A DNA stretch of 64,000 nt from Orbicella franksi (Eukaryota): contig OZ116712.1 of NCBI GenBank assembly GCA_964199315.1, positions 3,410,001 to 3,474,000 of the forward strand, read 5' to 3'. Below are positions 18,401 through 41,600 of this stretch, piece by piece. The notes beneath the pieces are model-generated. The model had not been told where the DNA came from, searched no databases, and saw nothing but the letters and a program-made list of their open reading frames with translations. Each line of letters starts with the position of its first letter. Position 1 is the first letter of the stretch. Both the position numbers and the translations under genes were made by a program.

Positions 18401-20570
18401 GCGGAAATAATGGTTATATGATGATCCTCTTTAAGAGCATGGTCGTCTTTGAACCACGTGACCTCGGCCTTGCACTCGGCTGGTACTCGGACGTCTAGCG
18501 TGAGGTTGTCGCTTTCTTTAACTTGTTTGTCCTGAAGCTCCGACGAGAAAACCGGTTTTGGAACTGACGGTAAAGAAATGATACAAACCTCAGCTTTCAG
18601 TACACTTTATATAAAGATTTGGGAAAGCCTTGCCAGGTCGTAATATTTTAAGCCCAAGACCAGGCACACAAAACTGAACTATTTTAGAAACTCGAGCAAC
18701 AGATGCGAGAAAGAGCTACGAAGAAAATCAGTTAAAACTTTGTTGTCTTTTATGATATCTTTAAGAATTTTGCGACGAATCAAGACAACTTCCTCCAGGT
18801 AATGATCTAACTGCTGTATTCTCGTTAGGTACTTTATGGAAAATGGATATATACTGTAAAGAGAAAATGGACTTGATCATTTTCATTACTGACCTGATTT
18901 CGCGGCAGGCTTCGGTTTAGGTGCTGGAGGGGGTGCTCTGGAAACAGAATAAACAATAAGCAGTGAATATGGACAGATTTATAACTGAGTCTTTTATTGA
19001 CCTTGGTAAAGTAACCAAATCTAAGTATTTGAAATAAGTCAATGACAAGAAAAAAAAAAGGAAATTACGCCACGAACTAATCACAATTCAAAGCAAAAGC
19101 GTGAAAACGGTGGAGGTAGGGGGAAAATATTTTGGTTTTGCTTTTGCCACTGATCGGTTAATGAAAAGCACGTTGTAATGTTCTGATCAGTAAGATGGTT
19201 TTATGACAAATTCTGGAAACAATCCTAGAGCTAAGCAGACACAGAACCCCGCGTAAATTTCTGGAAATTAATTGCTGAACAAACTGCCCAAAAGCAGCAA
19301 AATCAAAGTCATAACTACACGAAATAACACCAATATCTGAAGAAAACAAGACCCATATCTTACTTGGCAGGAGGTTCTTTCTTTGCTGGTACCTCATCTT
19401 CGGACGTTTCTTCACTTTCTTCCTCGGTTGACTCTTCGAGGCCTGAATCAAATAAAGAGAACCTCTAAGCGTCATGACAGCTCTCTTTGCGAGCTTTTTT
19501 TTCTCTCAAGACATAGATCCCTTGAGAACACATCTCCAACGTGGTTTCAATTTTTGGTCAATCCTCATCAGGGAGGGCCGGAAATTGCACATTTTTCTTG
19601 GACAGTGTAGGGCTCTTTACTGTAAAGGAGCTACGTCACAGTTTGCGCATCTTGAAACGTTTAGCCTAAATTTTTCAAGTTCGCCGTTTGTAATCCGTGT
19701 TAATCTTCTCCATCCTTAACCATCCTTGTTCCTTTATTGTTTATTATTATCTCTTGGGCATTTTTCTATCTTAGTTAACTACTATTTTCAGGTTTCCTTC
19801 AATTTAACACTAATTTTGTACGTGGCCAAAATAACTTAAAATACTGTGACTGAGCTCCTTCAAGTCATTGTGCTACGTAGAACCGAAACAACAAAGCAAC
19901 TGACCTTCTACTTCAAGCGCTGCAGTGCAAGAAACCTCTCCTTTGATGTTTGACGCTTCACATTTGTAAACGCCTTCGTCATCAGCCACCACCTCATTCA
20001 CAAACAGAGAGAACACTCCGTCATCATCTTCGTCAAACCGGAACTTCCGGCCCTCTGTAAGAGGTTTATCATCCTTTAACCATCGTACTTCCGGTTCTGG
20101 GCTTCCGGTGAGTTTGACATCAAACTTTGCCGCGCTTCCTTCAATGACTTCCGCTTTCTTCATGGTGCGGACGAACTTGGGCGGAGTCTCAGGGGGACCA
20201 TCTTCGAGGTCAGGGGCACGAGACACTGGTATGTCTGTGGCCAGTGTCACTGTTTTTTCTACTGGCATCTTAGGACTAGACGTCGAAAATATCAACAGGT
20301 AATTAGTGTGATTAGCTGGTAACTTGTCGATGTAGAAAGAAATCACTGGAAAAAAAATCAGCTTAACCTAAATCCTGACCCTATAAAGTGGAAATTTAAA
20401 AAGTAAATTGACTTACAGCGACATGACACCTTCTTTAATTTCTGGCTTAGGAGCTGCAAAGAAACAAAGCGGTAAAGACATAAGTCACATATTGGTCATA
20501 AAATTTAACCAAACCCAAATGTTGCAGTAAGCCAAGAAAACAGTGAAACCAACAGGTTCGTTGATTATTG

Positions 20571-20602
<32 letters not shown>

Positions 20603-23600
20603 TACTGCCAAACCGCTGAACGAAAGAACGAGCCAACGAACTAATTTAAATCAGAATCGAAATGGGAGAGAACACAAAATTTAACTTGCACTTGTAAATA
20701 ACATATCTAACACAAAACGTCATTTACTATCCTTTCCATAAATGAGACAGCCATAAAGCACGTAAGAAGCCGAAACTACCTTGAACAGTCAGCTTAGCAG
20801 AACAAGTAGCTTTTCCAGCTTTGTTCTTAGCAATGCAAGAGTACTCTCCCTGGTCAGCGGTTTCTACACGTGGAATACGCAGTACATGCACGCCATCTTT
20901 GTTCTTGTCAATCTTAACTCGACGTCCATCTCTGATTGGTTTGCCTCCTTTCTGCCATTCTACATCCGGGACAGGGGTTCCGGACACCTTAACTGTCAAC
21001 TTCACCTCCTCACCGTCCGTGACTGTTGTGTCTGTAAACTTTTGCTCGAAGTTTGGGCGGACCGTTACCTCCTGACGAGGTTTGGAAAGTCCTGAAGTTT
21101 GAAAAAGAGTTCTCTTTAGTGGTTTGTCACGTAATCTTGTCAAGCACATCTTGAAAAGTTTAGCCTAAATTTTTCAAGTTCGTCGTCGGTAATCTGTCAA
21201 TCTTCTCCATCCTTAACCATCCTTCCTTTATGGTTTATCATTATCTCTTTAGTGTTTTTCAATCTTAGTAAACTATTACTTCCTTCAATTTAAAAGTAGT
21301 TATACGCGTGGCCAAAATTATTCAAAATACCATGACTGTGCTCCTTTAAAGTGACTGCTATGTTCATGTTAAAGAATCTTTCCACCCTTCCCTCGAACCA
21401 AATTTTCGACGATTTTTGGCATATTATAGTAGAGATGGAGAAAGAGGAGGAAGACTGCCTTCACAGTTCAGAAAAGAAGACAATCGGTTGCCTCAACATT
21501 GTGTTGGATGTGATTTTCTTACTGGTGACATATTTCAACATAAAAGTTAAACTCTAAATCTAACCTGTCACAGTGATTTTACACGCCGTGCTGACGCTGC
21601 CCGCCTTGTTCGAGGCTTCGCATTTGTATTCTCCCGCGTCCTCTACCTCACAGTCTTTTATTACAAGTGTAAACCCGCTCACTGATTGGCTGATGTCAAA
21701 CCGCCCTCCAGCGCTGATTGGCTTATCATCCTTGAACCACTGGAACCCAGGTTCCGGCGTTCCCATCGCCCGGCATGCTAAGCGCACCGAACTTCCTTCA
21801 ACCGCTGACCTGTCGCGCAGTTTGAGGATAAACTCTGGTTCTCGAAGGCGTTCTTTTGGTTTTGCAGGCTCAGGCTTGGCTTTTGGTTCTGCTTTTGGTT
21901 GAGGTTTTGGCGCTGGTTTCGGCGGTGGCTCTGATTTCTCTACTTGAGCAGTTGCAGGGGCAATAGACGTCTCGATAACTGGAAGTGGTTTCTTCGAATC
22001 CCCGGGTGGTTTTGTCCTGAAAGCGAAAACAAAAATTGAAAATTGAAATCATACGAAGATCATCCAAATTCTCCTTACTAGTTATCATACAATTTCTACA
22101 ACCATCTTTGGCAGAATTTCGCCCTATAATCGAAACTTTTTTTCTCGAGACGTTCAAGCGCTCTTTCCAAAGTAATGTTCTTTGTTTCAAAACAAATAGT
22201 TCTCTTCCCTGGAGTTTCGAGTCCTATAAAATAAGACATCACAGACTTCGCTTCCGTTTTTTGTTCTTCCATTCTCTCATTATGAAATAATACTTTTAAA
22301 CAGGCTTCTCAAATTAGCAATATTCCTTCTGACACTTACTTCTCTTCTTCCGGTTCCGGTTCACCAGCAGACTCACTTTCCTCGTCTTCTGTTTCTGTAA
22401 CAAAGAAAATAATAAAACAAAAATTATAATTATACAATTTGAAACAAGTGCCAACAAAACAACAGGGAGAAATCTCCCTGCGTTCGCTGGCTTGTGAAGA
22501 TAATGCGAATATGATACGAACGATTTTAAAAGACATAAAAGGCTCATGCAATATCTGAATAGATAGAGAATCGACAATCATTCCCATATAGTTGAAGAAC
22601 AAACACACACACGAAAAACATCCCCTCCCCACAGCTCTCTTTCGGATCCGAACAGGTGATGACCTCTAATCATAGCTGATCTAGTTTTCAAGAACCCAAA
22701 CCAAACAGAAATTGAGATAAGCTAAATGCTATCCAGTGAATACTTTGTCTATTTTTACATGTCATCTTAGCGTCTGTTATATTTTGAAGTTTTTAGCCAA
22801 AAGTTACTTACGCAATACAAACAAATCCGCTGAGCAGTGTGCCTTGCCGGCGCTGTTCCTAGCCACGCACTTATACAAGCCTTCGTCACTTCCGCAGACG
22901 TCATCAATAACAAGCACCTGCCAGTCATCATCATCCTCAAACTTGTATCTTCCGCCCTCAAGCAGGGGTTCGTTTTCTCTGTACCACCGGATGTCTGGGC
23001 GAGGGTCGCCAATTACACGGCACTCCAATCTCGCGGTTTTCCCAGATACTGCGTCGACGTCTTGGAGCTTCTGGGTAAACTTTGGTGTTGTTCCTTCAAA
23101 CTCGGGCTCCATATCAGCTGGAAAAAGAACAATTTTTGTTCAAAACGTCAAAATTGAATTCGTAAAACACTGTAAAATGAATATCACCGCATGGAAGTAA
23201 TGCTCAAAAAGCTTTCATTAGAATGGTCACACACGGGGGTTACATCCACAGACTTAAAAGTTACAACCACCTTGTACAGGATAATAAACAGTACCAAATG
23301 AAAGAACTGCTCAGTAGCTTTCACACTAGGGTTTCATCCACAGACTAAAAAGTTAGAACCACCTTGTACGGCATAATAAACAGTACCACATGAAAGGACT
23401 GCTCGATAGCTTCACTTGAATGGTCACACACTAGGTTTTCATCCACAGATTTAAAGATAAAACCACGATGTCGCACTGTTTGAGACTAACAATTAAGGTT
23501 GGTTTTACTCACGTTCAACATTGAGGTAAGCATTGCTCTCCACCTGACCAAACTCATTTCGTGCCACAAATCGAATGTGCCCTGCATCTGTCCTCTTGGC

Positions 23601-26600
23601 GTCCGAGATGGTCAGAGCAAAAAGATCCTCGTCACGTTCAGAGGTAAAACGAGGCCATTTACTGACAAGTTTTTCATCTTTGTACCACTCAGCTGTCAAG
23701 GCGCTACTGCTCACCACGCGACACGCAAACTTTGTCACGCCACCTTCCTTTACGTCACGGTTGCGTAACACAAGCGTGATGTCCGGGGGGAGCTTGGGTG
23801 GGCCAGAGGATTCGGCGTCGACTTCATCTTCAGTGTCATCTGACAGCATGTCAAATGTCGACTCACTGGCAACAAAAAGAGCATTTGCAATGAATATATA
23901 GTTGTTTCGTTTCCACAAAATAACAAAACTTTCCCGTTTACAGTAAGTCATGTTTCATTCAACTGACCGTTTTCGTGCTTTGAAAACAAAGGAGAATGAA
24001 GAGAATTAACTGCCACATTATTCAACGAAATTTAAATATTCACTTACCGAGAAAGACGCCTCTCATATTCTGACCCACTTGCAGAATCGAAACCATGACC
24101 TGTGAAACAAGAAGGAAATAAAGGAAATAAAATTTATATGCTAAATCTACATATATACTCGTTAAGACAGCATGACTAAGTAGAGAATAAAGTTTGAGCT
24201 GGGAAATATACCGTGGGAAGTTTGCTTCAACTCGGTCTTGTGAACATGGCGTCTATTTGAAACCGGAGTTACTCGCGGAACGGTGTTTTATAGAGAAAAT
24301 ACGGCAATAACACTGTGTTGAGAATCACAGAACACACTAAAGAATCTGCCCACGGATGAGTACCTTAAAAATTTAGCCAACTCGTCTTTCAAGTTTTGTC
24401 ATTCTCAATAAAGCAAGCACTAAGGGCGCTATAAGCATGACGCCTGGTTACGAAAGAGGACATGTTAAAACGATACTTACTCTCTATGAACAGCTCTGCA
24501 CTGCATTGAGCTTTCCCAGCTGGATTACTTGCTACACACTTGTAGCGTCCTCGGTCAGAATGCTCTGCTTCTCTGATCAGTAGTGAACACAAGCCGTCAT
24601 CTTCAAATGTGAACTTGATCCGTCCACCCTCGCGGATCACTCGGTTGTCCTTGTACCAGTCAACCTCGGGCTCGGGGGTTCCTGGATAAATACACAAAGG
24701 AAAAAACTTTCTGTCACAAAGAAAAACTCCAAACAAACAAAGCACTCATAATTTATCTTTCCATGGTTAAATACATAATTGTGACAACTTTGACGATTTT
24801 ATTGGTGACCGTGTTTCTATGCTTGTGTTGCCATCATTGTTGTTGTTTGATCCAGTAGTCTTCACTGGAACATGGATTTTATACCGACTGTTCCCAAGTT
24901 GAAACCTGTGAAAATTCGCTTTTGTTGCTGCTACTTTCACCTATGACTCTGCTGTTGCTCCTGCTGCCAATCACTAGCACATTGTTTACCACTTTTTCCC
25001 AAGTGGGAATTTCAGATACATTGTTTTAACAATACCCGAATGAACACTGTACTCAAATTAAAGTTTTAGACCAACATTCTCAAACGAGCCTCAGTAAAAT
25101 AGTCCGTACATACATACATATACATTTTATTTGTTATCAAATTAAAATTACAATTGTAACATGCCCGCGGATAGCTGAGCTAATCTAGGCGGGTCATGTT
25201 TAGACGAGTTATTAATATACAACTAGGTACAACCAAATACAACTGAAGGTAACAAGAGAACTAAAGAGACTAGAATTGACAACGATGACTAAAGACAACT
25301 AATAAACTAACGATATTACAAATAATAATTAACAACAGTTACGACGAGAGACTACAGATACACTAAAGCGAAATTATTGAGTATTAATGAATACATACTA
25401 GGAGGAAAATAAATTCAGCTTTACTTTTTGAACGATTTCTGCAAGATCAATATAACAGTCTTCTGAAGCTAGGATTGCAAAAAGTTCTTGTTCTTGTTCA
25501 CACAAGCACACCGAGAAAAGTAAAATCTACTTATTAAAGAAGAATTACCTTTCACACGAACATCAAACTTAGCAGCACTTCCTTCTACGATCTCGACGTC
25601 CTGGATTCTTTGGATGAACTCGGGTTTCACAGCCCCAGCAGGAACCGGTTCACGTCTCAATACAAGCTTCTGAGCTGTGAATTAAAAAGAAGCAAAATTT
25701 CATTTGCGAAAACTCAACCGTTACACTTTGTAAAAAGATGTTATGGGCAGGCTAAACTTGCGGCCTTTTTCCTCAAGGCAATTAAGTTCAATAAAGCCCT
25801 ATTTAAACATAAGCTGCTTTTTGTCTTTCCGAGAAAAACGAAGTGCGATTTTCTGTACATCGAATTTGTTTTTTCTTACTTGTGTAGATTAGAGAACGTT
25901 TAAGGAGCTATATCACGGTTTGCGCACCTTGAAAGTCTAGCTTAAACTTATCAAGTTCGTCGTTGTGTAATCCGTGTTAATCTTTTCAATCCTTAACCAT
26001 CCTTGTTCCTTCATGGTTTAATATTATTTCGTTGGTGTTATTTTATCTTTGTAAACTATTATTTTCAGATTGTCTTCAATTTAAGGGTACTTTTGTACGT
26101 CGTGGTCAAAATAACTCAAAATTCCGTTACTGAGCTCCCCTAAGCCAAGAAACCTACCATTGACTTTGACAATGAATGGCTTCACAGCTGTCCCAGCAGG
26201 GTTTGTAGCCTCAACTCGGTAATTTCCTGAATCTTCCGGTACCGCCTTGGGAATCAACAGAATGTTTTTGTCTCCCACCATCTGTAGCTCGACTCGCTTC
26301 ACTCGCCTAGCAAGACGATTTTCTTTAAACCACTCAACTTGCGGCGTAGGTTTGCCTTTCGCTTGAACAACGAGCTTCACCGGGGCACCCTCCCACACCT
26401 CAAACAGCTGCTCTTCCGTACCTTGGACAAACGTGGGAGCAAATTGTCTGTCACTGACCTTAAGCTCTGCTGCGCAAGTGACTTCACCTGCAGTGTTTCT
26501 CACTTCACACCTGTATTGGCCACTGTCTTCTCGTCGGCAGTCACCAACAGTAAGCGAATACCTCTGCCTTTCGGAGTCTTCATCCATGGTGTACTTCCCT

Positions 26601-29600
26601 TCGTTCTTCAACAGCATTTTCCTTAAGTACCATTGTACTTCGGGCGAGGGTTTGGCGGTAACCGAAACTTCAAACACCGCTTCATCGCCCTCTACAATTT
26701 CCACATCCTCCATCCTTGTCTTAAACTCCGGTTTACTCGCGGATTCACTTACAACAAGCCGTGTTCTGCATGAAGCTGTTCCAATCTTGTTCTTGGCTGT
26801 GCACTGGTATTCCCCACTGTCTTCAGGTCTGACGTCCGAGATAACAAGAGAACACAGCTCTCCATCAGACTCCATTTGAACCCTTCGACTTTCGTCTATA
26901 GGTCGGCCATTCTTGGTCCATTCAATGTTCGGTTTAGCTGTTGCATTTAGACGACATTTTAGTGTCGCTGTACCGCCAACAGTAGCTTGTGTTTCCTCTA
27001 AAGGTTGAGTGAATTTTGGTGCAGGTTTCTTGCCTACAAAATAAATAAAAATTCTGTCTTCAGATTTGTGTTTTTCTTTTAAAAGGAAGGTAAGTCATTG
27101 GGTCTAGTAGCCCACAACTACAAGAACTCTGTTTCGCTTTCTGTAGCACGATGAACCTTAAGAGTATCACCTCCCTCCTGATAAACCCTTCATCCATCGT
27201 AGGTCGACATTTTTGTCCGTGATTTAATTCACAAATACTCATTCAAACCACCTGAGTACCGTGGGAAAAGTACTTTGCCAAACAACAAGAGATAAGGACA
27301 GAGACGTGAGACCAGGTTCTCAAACCTCTCCTAATTTACGATACATCGCAAATATCTTTTACTCAACAAAGAGCAATTGCATGTGAACAAGCTAATCAAG
27401 CAGGGCATTAAAACTCTCGTCAACACAAGACAAACAGAAGATAACTTACCTTCGATATTAACTTGGAAGGTCTTTGTCGTTGTACCTGCAGCACTCTTTG
27501 CAACACACTTGTAAACTCCCGAGTCTTCAGGGACAACAGAAAAGATTGTAACACCAAATTTATTTCCTCGAGCTGATAAGTTCACGCGACTAGTTCTTTT
27601 TAACAGTCTATCATCCTTGTACCATTCCACGTCTGGTCTCGGATTCCCTTGAATAGTAACATTAATCTTAAGTTCGTCGCCTTCGTTAATCTCTATGGGT
27701 AAATCGCCGTATTCATCGGAGAACTCTGGCGCAATTTGTCTCTCTTTTACTTCAAGTCGAGCAGAACACTGCATTCTTCCAGCCTCGTTTGCCGCTACGC
27801 ACTTGTAGCTTCCGAAGTCATCCATCGACACATTCTCAATTAACAGTGAATGTGAATCTCCGTCGTCGGACTGTACCGTTTTAAACCTACCTCCGTCAGT
27901 GATAACTTTTCCACCCTTTGACCATTCAGTTACAGGTTTTGGGTTACCCAACACCTGGACATCAAAGCGCGCCGTATCGCCCTCGATAACTTCAATGTGT
28001 TTCATCTTCTCTTTAAACTCCGGCATGACAATGGCTTCATTTACAAGAAGCTCTGCTGAACAAGAGGCAGTACCATGTTCATTTGTCGCCACACATTTAT
28101 ACTCGCCTTCGTCGTCAGCAACAGTGTCAGAAATTGTCAGTCTGCAGACTTCAGAGTCGAAATAAGTCTTGATTCGCTTGCTTGATTTCACGGGTTCATC
28201 GTCCTTAAACCATTCAATGCTAGGCTCTGGTTTTCCATGAACCCAACATTCTAACTTGGCTGCGCTACCTTCAACTACTTCTACTTTCCTGAGAGGCTTG
28301 AAAAACTCTGGTGCCGTTCCTTTAGGTTTCTTAGCTGTTTTAAAGAGGAGAACACATAACGCAATTGACGTAAATTATCTTCTATCTGGCCAAACTCCAG
28401 ACAACGCAGGATGAATCAGGAACAGTATTATGTAACTAAGAATAAACAGAGCCACATGGTACCCACACGCTATATAGCCTACGATGTACGGTTATTAAAC
28501 GAAAATAATTTCCCGAGTCTTGCAACACTTCCAGAAAGAAACATCAGTATGTCAAAAGCATTTAGTCAGGAAATTCAAAATTACAAAATCGCCATGGCAA
28601 CGTTTGGCGCGAAATTTCTCGATACAATAAAAAAGCGAAAAGCCCGCGATTGTGAGCGTTATTTGTCACCAATGATATTGAAAGGTAATCAAATGGTATA
28701 CTCGAAAAATAAGGAGATAATTTCACTAACGTTTTGTCAAGAGTTTAAAAGTTACAAGAATTTTGACAAAACGCGCGTGAAATTATTTCCTTCTTTCACT
28801 CGTCAACATTTGATTATCCAACCAATTTGAAAAAGGCTCTCTTACGTTCAAACTACATAAGTCTCTTCTCTTGCTTACCTTCTATTTCAATCGTAAACGT
28901 CCGCGTTGCTGATCCCATTTTACTTTTCGCCTCGCACTTGTACACTCCAGAATCAGCCGGTTTGGCGCTATAAATTAGAAGTGTGTATTTATCTCCTTTA
29001 ACCAGTGTGGTAATATTCGACGACTTTCTCACATTAAGTTCATCTTTGTACCACTGGACATCTGGAGCAGGTTTTCCTCGAATTGTGACCTCTAAAGAAA
29101 CCTCGTCTCCTTCTTTAAATTTTATAGGAGCTTCACTGAGTTCATCAGTAAATTCTGGAGTTGTTAGTTTTTCATTAACGTCTAATTCTCCACGGCAGGT
29201 TGCTTTTCCTGCCTCGTTAGAAGCAACACATTTGTAAGTCCCAGCATCGTCTAAAGTTGTTTCATCGATAATCAAAGAGTGTTGTTCATCTCCTTCCCCA
29301 GTTTTAACCGTAAATCTTCCTTCGTTTTTGATTGCTTGAGTTCCACGGAACCATGCGATGTTTGGCTCGGGATTTCCAGAGACTCGCACATCAAACTGAG
29401 CTGGCTCGCCTTCGCTGACTTGCATACTTTTCAGTTTTTCTTTAAATTCCGGCGCCACAATGGGTTTAGTTACGAGAAGTTCTCCTTGAGTAGACGCTGA
29501 TCCGAGATCGTTTTTAACCACACATTTGTAGTCTCCACTGTCATCTGTGTTCGTTTCAGTGAATGACAGCTGGCACATGTCGCCTATGATATCAGCTTTG

Positions 29601-32600
29601 ATCCTTCGACTAAGCTGAACTGGTGTTCCGTTTTTAAACCATTCTGCTGTTGGTTCGGGCGTGCCCGTCATGCGACATTTTAATCTCACAGGGTTACCCT
29701 CCACAACCTCTATTGCCTTTAACGGCTGCGTAAACTGTGGGGCTACTCCCTTTGGTTTCTTTGCCTTTTTGCCTGAAAGAAAATTAGGTAAATTGTATTA
29801 GAGTCCTAACAGACAGATGCTAGCATGGTGAAAACTATAGATCTCAGAAGTCCTGCAACGTTGTTACTAGTACTTGCACTACTAGTGCATTTCGAGCGGT
29901 TTTCACTTGAGTATCGAAAAGTAATTGGTCTTACGTCACTTGGCTACACGATTTGCTTAAAAAACTCGCGCCACTTTTTCATCCAATCAGAAGTAAAACC
30001 AAAACCAATCGTGACTTGTTCGCTCGCGTCAGTTACAAAAAATTACTTCGTGTTTTGATTGGTTCACTGCATTGTCTGTGTCCTTTGTGATTGGCTAGAG
30101 TGATTACTTTGGTTTTCGTTTTACGACACTCAATTGAAAACCGCTGTATGCCAAACTAAATGATTTCACAACAATTATTCTGTCAGTGTTATATATCTTC
30201 CTCATTAAGTCTTCAGGTTTCTTTATCTAATTACACCTAGCACGCGCTACCTATACTACGATAATGTGTGCCCTATGTACATTTACGGACCAACTGTCCT
30301 ATTAAAGAGAGTTAATGATCTTGATTAAGATCTCCAAGAATTGACATCGGTAAAGGTACTCCTTAGCAGCGTGACATGACCCAATTAATACAGATTGATG
30401 TGACTATGACTACCACTTCTTTTTCCTTATTTACGCTACTCCCATGCTTCGTCCATTCCAAAAGGAAGCCGGCTAAACAGAAGATAAACTTGATCGCGTG
30501 ACTACGGTGAAGCACACTGCAAACATACCTTCGATGTTGACTTCAAATGTCCTTGTAACACTTCCTGCCTTGCTGCTGGCCACGCACTTGTACAAGCCAG
30601 AATCATCTGGAGTGACATTCATGAGAACAGCGGAAAACTTATCCCCTCGTGACTTGATGTCGACACGACTTGTCTTCCTCAGGGGCTTGTCATCCTTGAA
30701 CCATTCAACATCTGGGCGTGGTTTTCCCTTCACTGTCACATTGAGCGTCACCTCGCCACCTTCGACAGCAGTGATGGGGCCTGTCTCCCCCTCATCATCA
30801 AACTCAGGAGATGCCATTTCCTCTTGTAGTTTAAGCTCCGCTTTGCAGGACACTTCTCCAGCTTCGTTATTGGCTTTGCAGGTGTATGTACCAACATCGT
30901 CTGGAGCCACTTTGTCGATAACAAGTGAGAAGAGGTAATCTTCTTCATCGTCAATGAAAAGAAACTTTCCAGCGTCCTCGATTTTCTTAGTTCCTTTGAA
31001 CCACTGCAGGGTTGGACTAGGACTGCCTGACACACGCACATCAAACCTTCCCTCTTCGTCTTCAGCCACCTCAATGTCTTTCATCGCTTCGGTAAACTCT
31101 GGTTTAGTAGCAGGCTCGTTGACAAGAAGCTCCGCCGTGCAAGACGCTGATCCCAGCTCATTCTGAGCAACGCACTTATAATCTCCTTCATCGTCCAGAT
31201 CTGCCTCGGTGAAGGACAAAGAAGCAACTTCCCCATCGAAGTCGTCTTTCATCCGTTTGCTAGTTTTAAGGGGTTTGCCATCTTTGAACCATTCGATGGT
31301 TGGTTGCGGGGTTCCTTTCACTGTGCATGCAAGCTTAACTGCTGCTCCTTCAGATACCTCCACTGATTCTAGGGGCTGAATAAACTGTGGTGCAGTTCCT
31401 GTTGGTTTCTCAGCTGAGGAAAGACCGAAAAATGTGATAATCGACATCAGAAGGGAATTCATGGAAAGTCCCGTCATTTTTTAAAAGGGTGGAATCACAA
31501 CACGTAAAACAATGATTCTTCGGGAATCCATAGTCAAAGAATTCCTGTCAGTAGTTTTTAACAAATATCATAGTCTGTGCGCTCATAAAATCTACCAAAA
31601 TATGTTTTTGACCATATCTGATGTGTTGATAAGCAGACAGCAAGATTTCACAACCGTCTTTAAAGATTAACTTATTAACGGTCGTGGTAAACGTAGAAAA
31701 ATGCAAGGAAAGGCATCTACAACTCTCAGATTTCATCACTAACATCTTATTCCAGATCCCCCGTCGGCTAATACCAAGACTTCCCCAATTGAAATGAAAA
31801 TTTTCTTTTAACTAAAAAAACCCTTTGCAGAATTATTTTAAAGCCGTTTTAACCTCTGAACAATGGCGCAAAACATAGATAATTACTGTTTACATCATAC
31901 CTTGAACTCTGACATCAAATGTCCTGGTAACTGTGCCCATCTTGCTTTTAGCTTCACACTTATACACTCCGGAGTCTTCAGCCTTCACGCCAAGAATCAC
32001 CACAGAATGTTTGTCTCCACGAGCCTTGATGTCAAGTCTGTTGCTTTCACGAAGGGGTTTGTCATCCTTGTACCATTTGACATCAGGCTTGGGTTTTCCA
32101 TTGATTGTTACATCCAAGCTCACCTCTCCACCTTCGGTCACTGTTATGGGGGCATCTAACTGATCTTCAGATATTTCAGGAGCAAACAACCTCTCCTTCA
32201 CGATGAGGTCGGCTCGGCATGTGGTCTTACCTGGTCAAAAGGTTAACGATAATTAACGGTATTATTTTAAGTATCAAGCCAATAGGTGACTAAAACGGAC
32301 CCCTTAGTATTAATTCACTTTAACTAAACAAACGTCAAAGGAACAGTACTACGAAATCCAAAGGAACAAGGATGGTCAAGACTGAAGAAGATTGAGACGG
32401 ATTATAAACGATAAACCTGAAAAGATTAGAATGAACCATCCGTGACATGGCTCCTTTGCCAACATAATAAATGTAGTTGACATAATTATGTTAACATCCC
32501 CTATATGTAAGTAACAAAGATGGTAAACACTGGGAAAAACTGAGACGGATCGCGAACGAGAAACCTGGAAAGTTTAGAATGCACCATCCGTGACATCGCT

Positions 32601-35600
32601 CCTTTGCCAACATAATAAACATAACTACAAGGATGATTAAGATTGGGGAAGACTGATATGCATTACGAAAGACAAACTTCAAGAATTCAGAATATCCTTC
32701 AGCGCTTTCAGTCTCCTGCGAGAATTTCTTTAAATTACCAACAACTTAGTAAGTTGTGATCATGAGACAAGCAAACGGTTTTAACCAACCCTACGACAGA
32801 CAGTGTTTCAGTAATCAAACTCAACCCTACAACGTGTTTTAAGAAATGCCCTGTTCCTTACCTCCTTCATTTGACGCCACACACTTGTAAATCCCAGCAT
32901 CTTCCCGCTTAGCGTCACTTAATACAAGCGAATGTAGGTTGTCCTTTTGGTTCTCTTTGAACTCAGTTCGTTCATCGCTCTTCAGCTTGGTTGTTCCTCT
33001 AAACCACTCAACCTCGGGCACAGGGTACCCAGCCACCCGAGTATCAAACTGAACAGTGTCGCCCTCCATTACCTCGACCGTCTTGAGTTTATCCTTGAAG
33101 TCTGGCTTAGTTACGACCCTGATCGTCATGGAAGCAGCACAGGAAGCTGAACCTAATTCATTAGTAGCCACACACTTGTACTCTCCGTCATCGCCTGATC
33201 TTGTTTCTTTGATTGTCAATGAAACTGTTTGACCGTCACTTTCAAGTTTCACTCGTCGGTTCTCTTTTATGCGCACTCCCTTCTTGAACCACTCGATGTC
33301 AGGCTTAGGTTCGGCTACGACAGTGCACTGTAGTTTGGCCTCGCTGCCTTCTTTCACCTCCACAGGTTGAAGAGGTTCAGAAAACACTGGTGCTGTTCCG
33401 TCTGGTTTCTTAGCTGCAATTGGCAATCAAGAAAAACATGAGAAGCTGACAGACAAATGACAGGAAATAATCTTGTTGTATCGTCACAAAAACAAAATGA
33501 AGAAATCAGCCGAAGGTAACACAACGCAACTCGAGAGCAAGAAAAGCAGAAAACGGCACTGATAAATAAAAGTGACATTATCAAAATATTCTGAGCGTGA
33601 ATACAAGGTTCTATTCATTCATTTCCTGCAAGAATGATGTAACAGTAAATGTATTTATAGATTCCGTTTAGCACGAGACAAGCAAAAATAAACGAAACTT
33701 CAAATGTTAATGTTAACGTACTTGAAAAGCTCCTGTACAACGCAAGAAAGGCCTAACAACAATCATAGACCCTTCAAGCTATTCTCACAAGTATCTTTAC
33801 CTTTCACTTGCACATCGAAGGTTCTTTCTGCAACGCCTCCTTTACTGTTAGCCTGACACTTGAAAATACCGGAGTCTTCAGGGGTAGCACCCTTAATTAA
33901 AAGCGTGTGTTTACCATTCATCTCACCAACTTCCAAGCGATCACTGGCCTTGAGGTCCTTTCCGTCCTTGGACCATTCTACCTCTGGTGTTGGCTGTCCC
34001 TTGACGTTCACACATAGAGTAACATCTCCGCCTTCGTCTATGACTACAGGTGCACTCTCCTCCTCCTCAGCAAACTCTGGTGCAATGGTGATGTCCTCAA
34101 ATAGAGGCAGTGCACTTTCAGCGTCCTCAGCAATCTCGGGCGCGATAATTGTTTCTTCAACAACTAAGTTTCCCTTGCATGAAACTTCACCAAATTCATT
34201 GAAAGCAATGCACTCATACTCTCCACTGTCAGATGGTTTGGCATCTTCGATAACTAGCTCAAACAGGTCCTCCTCTATATCATCAATCAAAACAAAGCGG
34301 CCCTCGTCTTCGATTTTCTCCTTACCCTTGAGCCAGTCGACTTCTAGTGGAGGTGAACCAGTCACGCGGACATCAAACCTCGCTTCCTCTCCAGGCAAAG
34401 CACTGATGTTCTTAAGTTTCTCTGTGAATTCCGGTTTGGTTCCCGCTTCGTTGATAAGCAGCTCAGCTGTAGTCGACCCACTGCCAAATTCATTACGAGC
34501 AACACACGTATACTCACCCTCATCATCAAGCTCGCTTGGTTTGAACGTCAAAGAAGAAGACTTGCCGTCGAAGTTCATCCTGACGCGTTTAGATTCCTTC
34601 ACCTTCTCGTCATCTCTGAACCATTCAATATCTGGTTGTGGTTCTCCCTTCAGCTCACACTCTAAGCTCGCTGGTTCACCTTCCACTACTGTGATGTTTT
34701 CCAGAGGTTTGGTGATTTCTGGTGCTGTTCCTGTGGGTTTCTTTGCTGTGAAGACAGAATGTTAAGAAAACAGCACCATCATCTTGTATTTCTTTTGTCT
34801 TAACAATTAGTTCAGCACTTCAGGAAAAAAAAAATGAGTACATGTTATAAGAAAAATTGTTCAAGTTCTTAAAATAATAAAATTCTCTGGGGAGAGGGGA
34901 AGAGGTATTTTCAAACGACATTTTCAAAAGGCCACTTGCCTCACCTAGGCAGCGAGGGAGTTCATATGCTCCCTAACCTACCCTTACACGAAGTTAACAC
35001 AGTAACGAAAAAGTTAACAATTTGTAGCGTCATATTGTGTCCAACAGACATCTGAAGCGCACATTTTTTTGATCAGGAACTTGCATTTTCTTACTTGGAG
35101 TACCTTTCTAGATATTCTAACCTTAATAGTACTCCATCCCTCGGACTTCGCACTAAAATTAAAATAGCGTGAAAAAAATAGGTACACTGATTCGCATTGC
35201 AGCTTACGCGAACTGCAGCTCACCCAGGCCTCGTGTACAGCCCCCCTAACCTGTACAGACTTCCTTCAAACAATCGAAAATCATAATTTGTATCTGATTT
35301 CGGGTCTCATAGTTCAACATACACATTCCCCTCAGTGACTGCAATACACTTCTCTTAATGTTGATGATGAGAATTGTTAATGTTTCAAGAACAAAGAAGA
35401 AAGTCGCAAATTGATCCCATATGGCAATTAAAAGCACATACCTTGTACTTTGATATCAAATGTCCTGGTAACAGTGCCCATCTTGCTTTTAGCTTCACAC
35501 TTGTACACTCCGGCGTCTTCAGCCTTGATGCCAAGAATCACCACAGAATGTTTGTCTCCACGAGCCTTGATGTCAAGTCTGTTGCTCTCACGAAGGGGTT

Positions 35601-38600
35601 TGTCATCCTTGTACCATTTGACATCAGGTTTGGGTTTTCCATTGATCGTTACACTCAGGTTTACTTCATCTCCTTCAGTCACTGCAATGGGGGCTTCAGC
35701 CTGGGCTTCAGCAAACTCAGGAGCAAACAGCCTTTCTTTTACGGCAAGGTCAGTTCGGATTGTAGTCTTGCCAGCTTCATTCGCAGCCACGCATTTATAC
35801 ATTCCAGCATCTTCTCGTTTCACATCGCCAATCGCTAGAGAGAAACGATCATTTTCTTTGTCTTCTTTGATCTCAATCCGTTCATTATTAGTTAGTTTGG
35901 TTGTTCCTCTAAACCATTCTACACTAGGATCAGGATAGCCAACGACAAGCACATTAAAGGTAGCAGTGTCACCCTCCATCACATCAACCCCTTTCATTTT
36001 CTCTTTGAAGTCTGGCTTAGTTACGACCAATACTTTCAAACTAGCAGTGCACGAGGCAGAACCGAGATCATTACTGGCCACACACTTGTACTCTCCTTTA
36101 TCATCTGGCCTTGTTTCTTTAAAAGATATGGAAGCTGTAACTCCATCACTTTCAACCTTGACTCTTCTGCTCTCCTTCACTCTCACTCCATCTTTAAACC
36201 ACTCAAGCTTTGGCGCTGGCTCAGCTGTGACTGTACATTGAAGTTTGGCTGCAGTACATTCCTTCACTTCCATTGGCTGCAGAGGTTCTGTGAATTGTGG
36301 AGCAGTGCCCTCTGGCTGCTTAGCTGTAAGGATAAAAGCAGACAATAGTAACGAATTCTTAACAAAGACAGCTCTTATTAAACTCAGTGAGACATGTACC
36401 ATTGCCACTCAAGTATGATTATAATTAAATGTGTTTTTTTTCCTTGATGATACTCTTCCCATTCCCTTCATTAACCTGTCAAGTATTCAATTTTCAATAT
36501 TGGGACACAAAATCATAAAGGCAGACCACTGGAATAACTGCTGACGTTACTAAAATTAGATGACGGACAGTACCTGCAATCTGCACATCAAACACCCTCT
36601 CTAGAGAGCCTGCCTTGCTGCTGACTTTGAACTTGTACAAGCCAGAGTCACTGGGGACAGCTCCTCTTATTTTCAGTGAGTGTGTGTCCTCATTGATGCC
36701 AACATCCAAATGCTCATCCACTTGTACTGGTTTGTCGTCTTTGAGCCATTCCACTTGAGGTTCTGGCTGTCCTTTCTTCAACAGTACATTTAAATCAATG
36801 TCGCCTCCTTCTTCAGCAAGTATTGGTGCACTCTCAGCTTCTTCGGCAAACTCCGGAGCCACAAGGGTTTCTTCCACAGTCAGGTTAGCCTTACAGGACA
36901 CTTCAGCCAGCTCATTGAACGCAATGCACTCGTACTTTCCACTGTCTTCGGGCTTAACGTCTTCGATAATCAACGAGAAGCTTCCTTCCTCTTCATTGTC
37001 TAACAACGCAAATCGTCCTGCATCTTCCAATTTGTCATCTCCTTTGACCCAGTCAACTTCTGGTGGTGGCGACCCAGTTACAAGTACATCAAACCTGGCT
37101 TTCTTTCCCGCCTCGACACTCACGTTCTTCATTTTCTCCTTGAACTCCGGTTTAGCACCAGCTTCGTTCACCAGCAATTCAGCCTGGCTCGACACACTGC
37201 CAAACTCGTTACGTGCAACACACTTGTAGTCACCTTCATCATCAAGCTCAGTTTCTTTAAAATTCAAGGAGAATGTTTCATCGTCGCTCTCAGGCTTAAC
37301 ACGTTTGGACTCCTTCACCTTCTCGCTGTCTTTGAACCATTCAACAGTGGGCTTGGGTTGTCCGCTAATTTGGCATTCTATCCTGGCTGGTTTACCTTCT
37401 TCAACTTCAACTGTCTCGGCAGGTTTAATAACCTCGGGTGCCTTTCCTTCTGGACTTTTTGCTACAAAACAAAAGAACAATAAGCAACATCTAATCTCTG
37501 CAATGCCGTGGAAGAATGCGTAGCATAGGAGGCGATCCAAAAATAAGAACACGAAAAAACAAAATTGTTAACTTGATAATTTGCGTAACCAACTTCGTAT
37601 AGTTCTTTAATAACTGGAATGCTTCTCTCCATTCTTATCAGAGAACAGTCAAGTTCCAAATTGGCTGTTTCGATAGAAACTTAAAGGTACAGTCTGGACT
37701 ATCTAAAAGTGCTCTTAAATCTTTTCTAGTGTTTTTGCCCAGACTAACACTTTACTGTGTCCTTGTACAAATGAAAATCGACTTAGTTGTCAAAAAGCAA
37801 CCTACGACTGTGTTTCAAAACGGAAAATCGCGAAATACCATACCTGCTACATTGACATCAAATGTACGCGTGATAGTCCCGGCCTTGCTTGAGGCTTCAC
37901 ATTTGTATATCCCAGAATCTTCAGGGGTAACGTCCAAAATCACAAGGGAAAACTTATCACCGTTTTCATCGATCTTTATTCTGCTGGTTTTTCTCAGTTT
38001 CTTGTCATCTTTGTACCACTCCACACCCGGCACAGGCTTGCCTTTGATGCCCACACTCAAGCATACCTCATCCCCATCTGTGACGTTGACGGGAGCACTT
38101 TCCTCTTCGTCTGTAAACTCCGGCGCAATCATCTTTTCTTTCACTGCTAGAGCGGCCTTGGAACTTGCCTGTCCTTCCTCGTTGGCAGCAACGCATCTGT
38201 ACGTACCAGCATCTTCAGGCACAGTGTCCTCGATGATCAACGTAAAAATGCCCGCTTCTTCGTCGTCCATCATCACATAACGCCCTTCGTCATCCAATTT
38301 GTCCTTCCCTTTGAACCAGTCTACCACTGGAATTGGATTGCCTTCAATTGTGACGTCGAAACGTGCTGGTTCCCCCTCAGTGACATTCACGGGTTTCATC
38401 TTCTCGATGAACTCTGGTTTCTTGTTTGGCTCGTTAACGAGGAGTTCAGAAGCGCAAGACACTGTTCCGAGGTCGTTCTTCGCAACACACTTGTAAGCAC
38501 CTTCGTCTTCCAGCTCGGTTGAGAGAATCTTCAAAGTACACAACTCGCCATCAAAACGAATCTTTATTCTCTTGTCTTCCTTCACAGGTTCGCTGTCTCT

Positions 38601-41600
38601 AAACCACTCAATGGTTGGTTCTGGTACACCTGTCACTTTACACTGCAGCTTAGCAGGAGATCCTTGGACTACTTCCACCGGTTGCAGGGATTCTATGAAC
38701 ACTGGTGCAGTACCTTCAGGTTTCTTGGCTAAAGTGTATTAAGTATCAGGTAAGATTGATTAAAACAATTCTTCCCCAAATAAATTGAAGTCTGAGATTC
38801 AAACCCAAAAATTCCATATTGATAGCTCTACAAATCCGCGCGCAAAATTAAATAAAATTTTAAAAGAAAAAAAAAAAACAGAAAAACAACCAACCAGAAA
38901 GCATTATCTGGACGCCTGTACGGAATTTTTGGGGTCAAATCTGAAACTGCTCTCGAGGTGGGGAAAGAATAGGCTAGAATAAATTGGTAAGTACAATTTT
39001 AACTTTATTCTACCCATTTTGTTCAGTCTGTCCTGTTGAGACAAAGACCCTTGAAAGCAATTATGAGGTACTAAACGTTTCAAATTATTTTTCGTCATTG
39101 TTCGGGGTAACTTTGTGATAAAGTGGACTTTGGTTTCATTAACACAGTTGAAACAACAGTGCAACTGGAAAATTCAATACAAACATTCTGTAAGATACCA
39201 CCCTCTTAAGAACCTTTATGCATTAACTTCAATTGTCCATTAAAAATGAAACAGAGCAATCAAAACTCTCAAGGACGACGAAAGATTTTTAAAACATCTA
39301 GCATGAAATAAAGCACCTTTAACATCGACATCAAACGTTTTTTCTGCTTTACCACCCTTGCTCTTTGCTTCACACTTGTAAACACCGGAATCTTCAGGCT
39401 TGGCTTCCAATATAATGAGGGAGTGTTCCCCATCTTTGGCGTCCATCTTCAAACGACTTGTTTCCTGTAGCTTCTCCTCATCCTTGTACCAATCGACAGC
39501 AGGCTCTGGCTTCCCTTTCACAACAGTATTGAGACTGACAACATCACCTTCTCCCACCTTCACGGGGGCCGCTTCTTGTTCAGTGTCAAATACAGGTTCG
39601 GTGATGACCTCCCTGACAGCCAAGGCAGCCTTGCAAGACACTTGACCTTCCTCGTTTTCAGCTACGCACTTGTAAGCTCCTGCATCCTCTGGAAGCGTGT
39701 CGTTGATTGTCAGTGAGTAAGTGCCACTGTCTTCATTATCAACCATCTCAATACGCCCTTGATCTTCCAATTTGTCCTTGCCCCTGTACCAGTCAATGAC
39801 AGGTGAAGGGTGGCCAGTCACTTTCACAGAAAATTGTGCAGGTTCTCCCTCAGTGACATCAACAGGCTTCATTTTCTCTTCAAACGCAGGCTTTACGTTT
39901 GCTTCATTGACAAGAAGCTCCGACGAACAAGAGGCTGAACCAAACATGTTTTCAGCGACACACTTGTATTGACCCTCATCATCTAGTTCTGTGGTCGTGA
40001 TCTTTAAAGTGGCCCGTTCTCCGTCAAATCGAGTTTTGTATCTCTTCACCTCTGCCACGCTTTTACCATCTTTAAACCAAGCTATGTTCGGCTCTGGTGT
40101 CCCCGCGACCTTGCACTCCAACGTTGCCCCATTTCCTTCTGTTACTTCAACAGACTCCAGTGGTTGTGTAAACTTGGGGGCTTCACCTTGTGTCTTTCCT
40201 GTACCAAAAATACGAAAAAAAAATTCATAGCATTTCACCTCCACTGACTGTACACCTTTTGACGTTCTTCAACTTAGCATTTACCATCAGCAATCAACAG
40301 TCTTTGTTTACTTAATATTGAATAAAACACGTTAATTGTCCTATCAGTGATGATGAGGTCAACAGATTCCACAATGCAGACATTTCCCTTCTAGAGTATT
40401 ATCGTAAAAATGTACTTGGATTTCTACTCCAGTTACTCACTCAAACCACTTTCTCTTTCATCCAAGCACTCACTCGCTTTCTCATTTTCCACGCTGCATT
40501 AAACACACGTTTAATGCAGAAACATACGTTACTAATATTCATTTCACTCGCAACAGGTAATGAAGGAGATGTATTATAGTCCTGGTTCTTTCAATTTCAC
40601 AATTTTCGTCAAATCCTGAAAAATTCCAACTTTCTCAGCTTTTATCGTAGTGGTGAGATTTAAGTAGGATGTTCATTATCTTATTCAGCACTTAGCTTAC
40701 CTTTCACGTTGACATCGAAAGACTTTGTTGATATTCCCGCTGGGCTCGTGGCTTTGAAGGTATAAATGCCAGAATCTTCCGGTACCGCATGTTTGATATT
40801 CAGCGTGTACGTGTCTCCTTTAGTCTTTGTGTCAAGCCTACTTGTCTTTCGTACCGGCTTCCCATCCTTCAGCCACTCCACAGTAGGTTTGAAAGTTCCC
40901 GAGACCGCCACATTTAAGTCCACTTCGCCACCCTCGGTTATATCAAGGACTGAAGTCTCCGATTCTTCTGCGTCTTCTGGAGCTGCTTGTTTTCCTTTCA
41001 CTGTTAACTGTGCTTCACAGGATGTCTGGCCAACTTCATTTGATGCAACACACTTGTACGGACCAGCATCTCCAGCTTCAGTTTGCTCAATAATCAGTGT
41101 GAACAGGTCTTCCTCGATGGCATCTACGTGTACGAACCGCCCTTCATCTAATATCTTCCTTGACCCTTGGTACCACTCAACGTGAGGTTCTGGAATGGCA
41201 AAGATTCTAGCGTCAAAACGGGCTTCTTCTCCAGCGTCAACTACAAGATCGTCCAATTTCTTTGTGAAGACTGGAGCGGTTGTATCTCGGACAGGTCTTT
41301 CCTCGATTGGCAATGGTAACTCTACGTCCTGCACCTCGGAAGCGCTTACTGGCTGTTCTTGTATTCCGTCTGGTCCTACGTGACACAGAAAAGAATCCCT
41401 CACTCATACAGTGCATCAATAAATGAACAACAAGAACGTCAATAAATGGGTCTGAGGCAGACAAGAATACGACATTTTGCAGATCCAAAGCTACAGACTA
41501 GCTGTGTATCTTAGTATGAAGTGTTATTACTGAGAAACATTGAAAAGAACGGTTTGATTGTTTCACGTTTGTCATATTTAATGCGCCGAAATAGCATAAC

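What the first reader, a model, noticed from the sequence alone, without database searches (positions are those of the whole stretch)
32226..32863. Apparent intron gain inside one repeat module, flanked by a 7-nt direct repeat (AGGTAAG)
Seen in sequence: module 6 is split into 552+330 = 882 nt, exactly the length of its unsplit sibling module 4, and the other nine modules have no intron here. Both ends of the 631-nt intron carry the same 7-mer on the sense strand (GG-AG|GTAAG-G and CC-AG|GTAAG-A; CTTACCT at 32857-32863 and 32226-32232). One copy supplies the donor and the other the acceptor. The interior contains MITE family A remnants, but I see no TIRs directly inside the repeats. Established: insertion at an AGGT proto-splice site with target-site duplication is a proposed route to new introns. 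Inference: a natural case of intron gain with nine internal controls.
Basis: partly seen in the sequence, partly recalled or inferred. Interest (0 to 1): 0.7.

Follow-up and report, generated by a model that had tools for sequence, protein, structure and literature searches.

The report
Old coral intron, not fresh gain
A real, RNA-confirmed intron splits only one of ten repeated three-Ig exons in a coral giant Ig-repeat gene; it was probably gained once at a splice-site-like Gly-Lys codon pair, but before the sampled corals diverged, so its 7-letter flanking repeat cannot be read as an insertion scar.

Summary
Module 6 is 552 + 330 = 882 nt and is split by a 631-nt phase-1 GT-AG intron, with AGGTAAG in register at both borders. 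RNA reads of a sister species use exactly this junction.

The intron is not recent. All 25 module-6 orthologue clusters found in coral assemblies break at the same residue. Ten lineages checked at DNA level, from both deep branches of the module-6 tree, carry a phase-1 intron in the same Gly codon (277-631 nt). The sister module 4 is unsplit everywhere, as are the other eight modules. A single gain after a two-module duplication (m3-m4 to m5-m6) is therefore the most parsimonious reading.

The 7-mer is weak evidence for a target-site duplication:
- One copy is the donor consensus. The other is the acceptor AG plus Gly-Lys codons.
- The match is perfect in 3 of 10 lineages and 5-6 of 7 in the rest.
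- Two of nine neighbouring inter-module introns reach 6 of 7.

Module 4 keeps GGT AAG unsplit in 4 of 7 lineages, which fits a proto-splice site. The MITE pieces are later arrivals from a family with its own inverted ends and TTAA-flanked insertion sites. The mechanism of origin stays unresolved.

The parts
32862..33413 (-). Exon 6a (552 nt): Ig1 and most of Ig2 of module 6; ends ...AAT GAA GGA G
   Evidence: Reading frame and borders. RNA joints at 33413/33801 and 32857/32225. Its near-identical ORF product P0001 carries I-set Pfam hits.
32857..32863 (-). Donor-side AGGTAAG (exon AG | intron GTAAG)
   Evidence: Sequence. It equals the 5' splice-site consensus. The donor varies among orthologues as GTAAG, GTGAG or GTAAA.
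32231..32861 (-). 631-nt phase-1 GT-AG intron inside Gly codon G|GT, in the loop before the last strand of Ig2
   Evidence: RNA reads skip exactly 631 nt. An intron sits in the same codon in 9 other coral lineages, 277-627 nt long. As a whole it is single-copy in the genome.
32627..32698 (-). MITE-derived piece 1 (family model positions 42-113)
   Evidence: nhmmer E 2e-9 on the window and 2e-10 on the intron.
32509..32606 (-). MITE-derived piece 2 (model 7-118, includes the left TIR); first unit of the ~148-nt tandem pair
   Evidence: nhmmer E 4e-11. Direct repeat D2, 111 nt, 84% identity, spacing 148.
32326..32458 (-). MITE-derived piece 3 (model 7-151, includes the left TIR); second tandem unit
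   Evidence: nhmmer E 9e-24. Dispersed copies lie on many chromosomes.
32226..32232 (-). Acceptor-side AGGTAAG (intron AG | exon GT AAG = end of the Gly codon plus Lys)
   Evidence: Sequence. Gly-Lys at this place is shared with unsplit modules 4 and 8.
31901..32230 (-). Exon 6b (330 nt): last strand of Ig2 and Ig3 of module 6
   Evidence: RNA joint 31901/31413.
35442..36323 (-). Module 4, the unsplit 882-nt sister exon; homologous site GCT GGC AAG at 35775-35767
   Evidence: Modules 4 and 6 join with 99% SH-aLRT support in the tree.
31902..32105 (-). Gene-conversion tract shared with module 4 (35443-35646). About 96% identical, against about 68-73% upstream. It starts about 125 nt downstream of the intron.
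   Evidence: It explains the 'goes back' pseudo-joints.

Best explanation
This is an ordinary, efficiently spliced U2-type (GT-AG, phase 1) intron, and it is old and conserved.

It most likely arose once, in the module-6 lineage of a giant Ig-repeat gene. The timing is after a two-module tandem duplication (m3-m4 gave m5-m6) and before the radiation of the corals sampled here.

It sits exactly in front of Gly-Lys codons (G|GT AAG) that already looked like a 5' splice site, that is, a proto-splice site.

The identical AGGTAAG at both borders is held in place today by two separate constraints. At the donor it is the splice-site consensus. At the other end it is the acceptor AG followed by the coding Gly-Lys. 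So it cannot be used to tell how the intron was made.

The MITE pieces and the ~148-nt tandem units inside are later insertions and expansions in one sub-branch of corals. They had no part in creating the intron.

Shown: existence, splicing, position, conservation, absence from sister modules, and the secondary nature of the MITE. Inferred: a single gain, and the proto-splice-site target.
For: - **Junction.** It is used in RNA.
- **Protein level.** All 25 module-6 orthologue clusters stop being alike right after ...CVASNE(G/A)G. All 12 module-4 orthologue clusters run through the site.
- **DNA level.** Ten lineages from both deep subclades have a phase-1 GT-AG intron in the same codon.
- **Tree.** m4+m6 join at 99* and m3+m5 at 100*.
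- **Distant cnidarian.** Five homologous Ig2 sites on contig L040 (four read in full) are unsplit.
- **Sister module.** It keeps GGT AAG/AAA unsplit at the homologous place in 4 of 7 lineages.
- **Border match.** It is 7/7 in 3 lineages, 6/7 in 4 and 5/7 in 3. Neighbouring inter-module introns score 2-6 of 7, two of them 6/7.
- **MITE.** The family is found in this intron only in the window, L037, L038, L031 and L039. It is absent from L035, L036, L032, L033 and L034. The family has its own roughly 20-nt TIRs and TTAA-flanked insertions.
Against: - One gain in m6 and 'gain in the m4/m6 ancestor plus loss in m4' differ by only one event.
- No clearly orthologous module 6 from outside the stony corals was obtained, so the gain is not bracketed by an empty orthologous site.
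- Parsimony over the ten lineages, with module 4 as outgroup, reconstructs AGGTAAG on both sides (or 6/7) in their common ancestor. A true 7-nt duplication is therefore not excluded.
- Species names were hidden. The claim that the two subclades are the two major stony-coral lineages is an inference.
Confidence: 0.7

Rival explanations
1. A piece of DNA (a transposon, or filler captured during repair of a staggered double-strand break) was inserted at AGGTAAG with a 7-nt target duplication. The upstream copy became the donor and the downstream copy the acceptor. Both copies were then frozen by selection.
For: The repeat is exact and in register in the window, L037 and L039, and parsimony gives 6-7 of 7 for the common ancestor. 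The unsplit sister keeps GGTAAG at the site in 4 of 7 lineages, so the downstream copy is the original sequence. The mechanism is established elsewhere: transposon insertion into AGGT and repair-associated short direct repeats (PMC3443670), and introners that take one or both splice sites from the duplication (PMC9860276).
Against: Every position of the repeat is the favoured state under splice consensus or Gly-Lys coding. Two of nine conserved neighbouring introns reach 6/7 with no such history. There are no TIRs at the intron ends. The intron as a whole has no other genomic copy. The only transposon recognisable inside is a later arrival with different insertion-site flanks. The 2012 review warns that conserved Drosophila introns carry flanking repeats of 5 bp or more as often as gained ones.
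Confidence: 0.22
2. The intron is older than module 6. It was present in the progenitor of modules 4 and 6 (or earlier) and was lost precisely from module 4, and from other modules if it is older still.
For: This costs only one extra event compared with a gain in m6. Gene conversion between m4 and m6 is active in this array, so sequence exchange that could erase an intron is mechanistically available.
Against: Module 4 is unsplit in all 12 orthologue clusters and all 7 DNA loci. Modules 1-3, 5 and 7-10 are unsplit. The three-Ig modules read on L040 are unsplit at the homologous site. The conversion tract seen today stops about 125 nt short of the intron site.
Confidence: 0.12
3. Tandem duplication of an exonic segment that begins with GTAAG and ends with AG (for example the 330-nt exon 6b itself). 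The first copy was spliced out as a new intron and has since decayed.
For: Exon 6b begins GTAAG and ends ...CAAG, so a duplicate of it would be a ready-made GT..AG intron. Its 330 nt lie within the 277-631-nt range of the orthologous introns. The model is an accepted route (PMC3443670).
Against: No residual similarity between any of the ten introns and exons 6a or 6b. All tblastn and blastn hits have E above 0.05. Given the intron's age, the absence of similarity is also expected, so the test has little power.
Confidence: 0.05
4. Recent intron creation by insertion of the MITE seen inside the intron.
For: Three pieces of the MITE family lie in the intron.
Against: Five of ten lineages have the intron without any trace of the MITE. 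The pieces are left halves in tandem and lie 143 nt or more from the donor and about 75 nt or more from the acceptor. Family copies are flanked by TTAA, not AGGTAAG.
Confidence: 0.01

Closest known systems
Intron gain at a proto-splice site (Dibb and Newman 1989, as cited in PMC3443670)
   Same: The exon letters around the intron are AG|GT in 7 of 10 lineages, and G|GT or G|GC in all ten. The intron-less sister module keeps the same GGTAAG motif at the homologous place in 4 of 7 lineages.
   Different: This is a single old case. The motif is also what Gly-Lys coding gives, so preference for the site cannot be separated from later selection.
Transposon-made introns / introners with splice sites taken from the target-site duplication (PMC9860276; PMC3443670)
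   Same: An identical short repeat in register at both borders could supply the donor and the acceptor, and the coding length is unchanged (882 nt as in the sister module).
   Different: There is no family of similar introns. The whole intron is single-copy. There are no terminal inverted repeats. The only recognisable transposon inside is secondary and has TTAA-flanked insertions. The event is ancient rather than recent or polymorphic.
Repair-associated intron gains with short flanking direct repeats in Daphnia (described in PMC3443670 and PMC4202315)
   Same: A short direct repeat flanks an intron that homologous copies lack.
   Different: The Daphnia cases are young and polymorphic. Here no intron-less DNA form was seen (two related species checked), and all lineages sampled carry the intron.
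Recursive splice sites (acceptor directly followed by a donor consensus)
   Same: The 3' border reads ...TTTTGACCAG|GTAAGA. This is the recursive-site motif, and splicing regenerates AG|GTAAG in the mRNA. The comparison rests on my own knowledge of the motif.
   Different: What follows is 330 nt of conserved coding exon, not intron. No read used the regenerated donor (low depth).

Membership tests
Canonical U2-type spliceosomal intron | GT..AG borders with a pyrimidine-rich 3' end | tested here: met
   GTAAGG...TTTTGACCAG in the window. GT..AG in all nine other lineages.
Canonical U2-type spliceosomal intron | Precise removal from RNA | tested here: met
   4 reads with 4 starts skip exactly 631 nt. 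Depth inside the intron is near zero, against 1-6 in the exon bins. The RNA is from a sister species, not the window's own.
Introner / transposon-derived intron | Many similar copies of the intron sequence elsewhere, including other introns | tested here: not met
   The 624-nt interior matches itself only. Only the MITE-derived part (query 230-527) has other copies.
Introner / transposon-derived intron | Element ends (TIRs) at the intron borders | tested here: not met
   No inverted repeat joins the two ends. MITE TIR copies lie well inside the intron.
Introner / transposon-derived intron | Target-site duplication that matches within the locus beyond what splice consensus gives | tested here: inconclusive
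   7/7 here, but 5-6/7 in 7 of 10 lineages, and 6/7 in 2 of 9 neighbouring old introns.
Recent repair-associated intron gain (Daphnia type) | Presence/absence difference among individuals or close species | tested here: not met
   DNA contigs of two related species hold both borders and show no intron-less joint. All orthologues are split.
Recent repair-associated intron gain (Daphnia type) | Short direct repeats flanking the insert | tested here: inconclusive
   Present but within reach of the local background.
Intron from tandem duplication of an AGGT-bearing exon segment | Intron sequence derived from the adjoining exon | tested here: not met
   No significant similarity of ten orthologous introns to exons 6a or 6b. 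The test has low power given the intron's age.
Proto-splice-site insertion | Exon context (A)G|GT around the intron | tested here: met
   AG|GT in 7 of 10 lineages (window, L037, L038, L039, L035, L033, L034). AG|GC in L031, GG|GT in L036, TG|GT in L032.
Proto-splice-site insertion | The same motif present, unsplit, in homologues that lack the intron | tested here: met
   Module 4 has GGT AAG or GGT AAA in L031, L032, L033 and L034, and GGC/GGA AAG in the window, L035 and L036. The sites on L040 are GGA/GGC/GGG followed by AAR or CGA.
MITE with TTAA-flanked TIRs (the interior repeat) | Terminal inverted repeats and constant insertion-site flanks in family copies | tested here: met
   The consensus is about 245 nt and ends TTAA|AGGAGCT...AGCTCCT|TTAA. 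Flanks beyond TTAA are unrelated between copies. The intron holds left halves only.
Recursive splice site | Use of the regenerated donor after the first splicing step | tested here: inconclusive
   No joint from 32862 or 32230 to a later acceptor was reported, but only 4 junction reads were available.

The most novel reading that the evidence does not exclude
The AGGTAAG pair is a genuine target-site duplication from the founding insertion. It has been preserved since before the sampled coral lineages split because the upstream copy became the donor and the downstream copy stayed Gly-Lys coding. That would make this a rare 'fossil' in which the insertion scar of an ancient animal intron is still readable, with the intron-less sister module showing the empty site.
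Probability: 0.22. Interest if true: 0.55.

Novelty: new member of a known kind. Interest (0 to 1): 0.3.

Why it matters
Documented intron gains in animals are few, and their mechanism is mostly argued from young cases in a handful of lineages.

This case offers a clean comparison inside one gene. Ten paralogous exons of nearly the same length are present, one is split, and its sister keeps the splice-site-like motif unsplit. That illustrates proto-splice-site targeting well.

But the event predates the split of the coral lineages sampled. It therefore cannot serve as a freshly caught gain, and its flanking repeat carries little information about the mechanism.

The practical lesson for the scan is this. 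A short in-register repeat that equals AG|GTAAG is expected wherever an exon starts with Gly/Ala-Lys codons. It should be weighed against neighbouring introns before it is called a duplication.

Tried and rejected
- **Other copies of the whole intron in the genome.** None. Only the MITE-derived middle is repeated.
- **Inverted repeats at the intron ends.** None. The 11-nt arm next to the donor pairs with an internal site.
- **Intron-less DNA allele.** None in contigs of two related species.
- **'Goes back' joints (34744/34745 to 31901).** These looked like back-splicing. They are explained by reads of the normal m4-to-m5 junction landing on the near-identical end of module 6, because module 4 lay outside the stretch laid.
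- **A MITE right end next to the acceptor.** I thought I saw one by eye. The family model does not support it, and the match ends at model position 151.
- **Residual exon similarity in the introns (tandem-duplication model).** Nothing above noise.
- **Sequence similarity between introns of the two deep subclades.** None. Only close lineages align.
- **Missing DNA.** Two look-ups returned no DNA (large files). Annotated full-length orthologues could not be reached because of the length window of the protein search.
- **Species names.** They are coded. Assigning the Tara Pacific scaffolds to Pocillopora and Porites is a guess from the expedition's design.
Full report
**What is there**

The window lies in a 497-Mb genome. 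Sequencing runs that hold this stretch are labelled as corals or coral metagenomes.

On the minus strand runs a giant gene made of Ig (I-set) domains. Ten consecutive exons of 876-945 nt each encode three Ig domains, and all have phase-1 borders.

Module 6 alone is split:
- Exon 6a: 33413..32862 (552 nt).
- Intron: 32861..32231 (631 nt).
- Exon 6b: 32230..31901 (330 nt).

The sum of 882 nt equals the length of module 4. The intron is GT..AG and lies after the first letter of a Gly codon (GGA G|GT AAG ACC). This is in the loop before the last strand of the second Ig domain. AGGTAAG stands at 32863-32857 and again at 32232-32226, in register with the two splice sites.

**Is it spliced?**

I laid raw polyA RNA reads of a closely related species (X23) on 30400-34800. 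They give a joint that skips exactly 631 nt, seen in 4 reads with 4 different starts and with 7 letters fitting on either side. They also give the two flanking introns of 487 and 387 nt. Depth inside the intron is close to zero.

DNA contigs of two further related species (X6, X9) hold both intron borders and show no intron-less form. They differ inside the intron by a 13-nt insertion behind 32685 and by one ~128-nt tandem unit fewer.

The 'goes back' joints are not circular RNA. The last ~200 nt of modules 4 and 6 are about 96% identical. Reads and contigs of the m4-to-m5 junction therefore land on module 6.

**How old is it?**

A protein search with exon 6a returned two kinds of ORF product from many coral assemblies and coral metagenomes:
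- 25 clusters of 132-263 residues. All whose sequence I read follow module 6 up to ...CVASNE(G/A)G and then run into unrelated read-through.
- 12 clusters of about 270-320 residues. These are module 4 and pass the site without a break.

In the tree the two groups are sisters (99% SH-aLRT), and the module-6 group has 98% support. Modules 3 and 5 also pair (100%). The array therefore grew by a two-module duplication, m3-m4 giving m5-m6.

The module-6 group has two deep subclades. Exon 6a is 66-73% identical in protein between the window and three lineages of the far subclade.

I fetched DNA for nine lineages spread over both subclades. Each has a phase-1 GT..AG intron in the same Gly codon, with lengths 531, 627, 423, 473, 585, 277, 442, 355 and 400 nt.

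Introns of the two subclades share no detectable sequence. Only close lineages align with the window. These are L037 at both ends (about 82-86%), L031 over the 3' third (68%) and L038 within the MITE-derived part.

Two of the loci are Tara Pacific coral-metagenome scaffolds that fall in different subclades. That expedition sampled Pocillopora, Porites and Millepora. So the two subclades may be the two major stony-coral lineages, whose fossil record goes back about 240 million years (PMC4083563). This last step is inference, because names are hidden.

**Gain or loss?**

- Module 4 is unsplit in all 12 clusters and in all seven DNA loci that include it.
- The other eight modules of the window are unsplit.
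- On contig L040, from a more distant cnidarian with very short introns, five homologous Ig2 sites are unsplit, four of them read in full. One-to-one orthology with module 6 is not established for that contig.

One gain on the module-6 stem needs one event. An intron in the m4/m6 progenitor followed by loss from m4 needs two. I therefore favour a single old gain, at roughly 3 to 1 over the loss scenario.

**What the 7-mer does and does not say**

In-register comparison of exon -2..-1 plus intron +1..+5 with intron -2..-1 plus exon +1..+5:

| Match | Lineages |
|---|---|
| 7 of 7 | window, L037, L039 |
| 6 of 7 | L038, L031, L035, L033 |
| 5 of 7 | L036, L032, L034 |

Position by position, with module 4 as outgroup for the coding side, parsimony gives AGGTAAG on both sides in the common ancestor. 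Only the last letter (G or A) is in doubt. So the repeat may be as old as the intron.

But each letter is also the favoured state under its own constraint. On the donor side AG|GTAAG is the consensus. On the other side AG is the acceptor, and GT AAG completes Gly and encodes Lys. That residue pair is shared with unsplit modules 4 and 8 and with the sites on L040.

The local background is high. The nine inter-module introns score 2, 3, 4, 4, 5, 4, 3, 6 and 6 of 7, because module exons start with CT AAG or GC AAG. A review of the field gives the same warning: in Drosophila, conserved introns carry flanking repeats of 5 bp or more as often as gained ones (PMC3443670).

I therefore treat the repeat as compatible with a target duplication, but not as evidence for one.

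**The proto-splice site**

The intron-less sister gives the most useful control. At the homologous place module 4 reads as follows:

| Lineage | Module 4 at the site |
|---|---|
| window | GCT GGC AAG |
| L031 | GCT GGT AAG |
| L035, L036 | GCT GGA AAG |
| L032 | GTT GGT AAA |
| L033, L034 | GTT GGT AAG |

So GGTAAG, a donor-like motif, probably stood at this place before the intron existed. The intron sits exactly in front of it. This fits insertion at a proto-splice site (PMC3443670).

It does not decide between the possible sources of the intron. Those are a transposon, repair filler, reverse splicing and a duplicated exon segment. A search for exon-derived sequence in the ten introns found nothing above noise, as expected after so long.

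**The MITE remnants**

The repeat inside the intron belongs to a ~245-nt family with roughly 20-nt inverted ends. Its copies are flanked by TTAA on both sides (TTAA|AGGAGCT...AGCTCCT|TTAA), and the flanks beyond that are unrelated between copies.

Four near-complete copies lie in other introns of this gene within the window: 17028-17266, 19621-19863, 21143-21351 and 25899-26143.

The module-6 intron holds three left-half pieces, at intron positions 164-235, 256-353 and 404-536. The last two form a ~148-nt tandem pair. Similar 148-nt tandem arrays occur at three other places on the same chromosome.

The family is detectable in the orthologous intron of L038 (nearly full length), L037, L031 and L039. 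It is not detectable in L035, L036, L032, L033 or L034. The MITE therefore entered an existing intron in one sub-branch and was then rearranged. It did not create the intron.

**Verdict**

- 'Intron gain' is probably right.
- 'Caught with its target-site duplication' is not supported.
- The implied recency is refuted.

This is a new, well-controlled example of a known kind of event. It is of modest interest.

Noticed in passing
window 31902-32105 and 35443-35646 (minus strand): The last ~200 nt of modules 6 and 4 are about 96% identical (third codon positions about 87% over codons 218-293). The rest of the two modules is 68-73% identical with saturated third positions. This is a gene-conversion tract that ends at the exon end and starts about 125 nt downstream of the module-6 intron.
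   Followed up: partly
window 17028-17266, 19621-19863, 21143-21351, 25899-26143; fragments at 997-1303, 6485-6652, 9409-9683: A ~245-nt MITE family with roughly 20-nt inverted ends, flanked by TTAA. Several copies lie in introns of this one gene, and dispersed copies lie on many chromosomes.
   Followed up: partly
G000:C15:2596389-2596798, C15:5559875-5560425, C15:16819472-16819862 (loci L002-L007): Tandem arrays of 3-5 units of the same ~148-nt unit (left part of the MITE) as in the module-6 intron. All are on the same chromosome as the window.
   Followed up: no
window 32501-32631 and behind 32685: Related coral species differ from the window inside the intron: one ~128-nt tandem unit fewer (with 16-17 replaced letters) and a 13-nt insertion. 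The copy number of the MITE-derived unit therefore varies among close species.
   Followed up: no
window 26158-40198: The module tree pairs m3 with m5 and m4 with m6, so the array grew by a two-module duplication. A distant cnidarian contig (L040) shows two alternating module types, one of them ending after two Ig domains.
   Followed up: partly
window 33801-34745 (module 5): Module 5 is 945 nt rather than about 882-888. This is due to a duplicated acidic linker before Ig3 (…[13 protein letters not shown]… followed by …[12 protein letters not shown]…).
   Followed up: no
window 29763-29775 (start of module 8): The acceptor expected from the module alignment is GG, not AG. The true exon start is probably 9 nt upstream (…CAG|GCAAAAAGG…), which would give 894 nt. 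I did not check this with RNA.
   Followed up: no
orthologous introns, last 12 nt (window 32231-32242; L035-L039): In the window's subclade the intron ends with a conserved TTCTGAC(C)CAG-like motif. This puts a branch-point-like CTGAC only about 5 nt from the acceptor.
   Followed up: no
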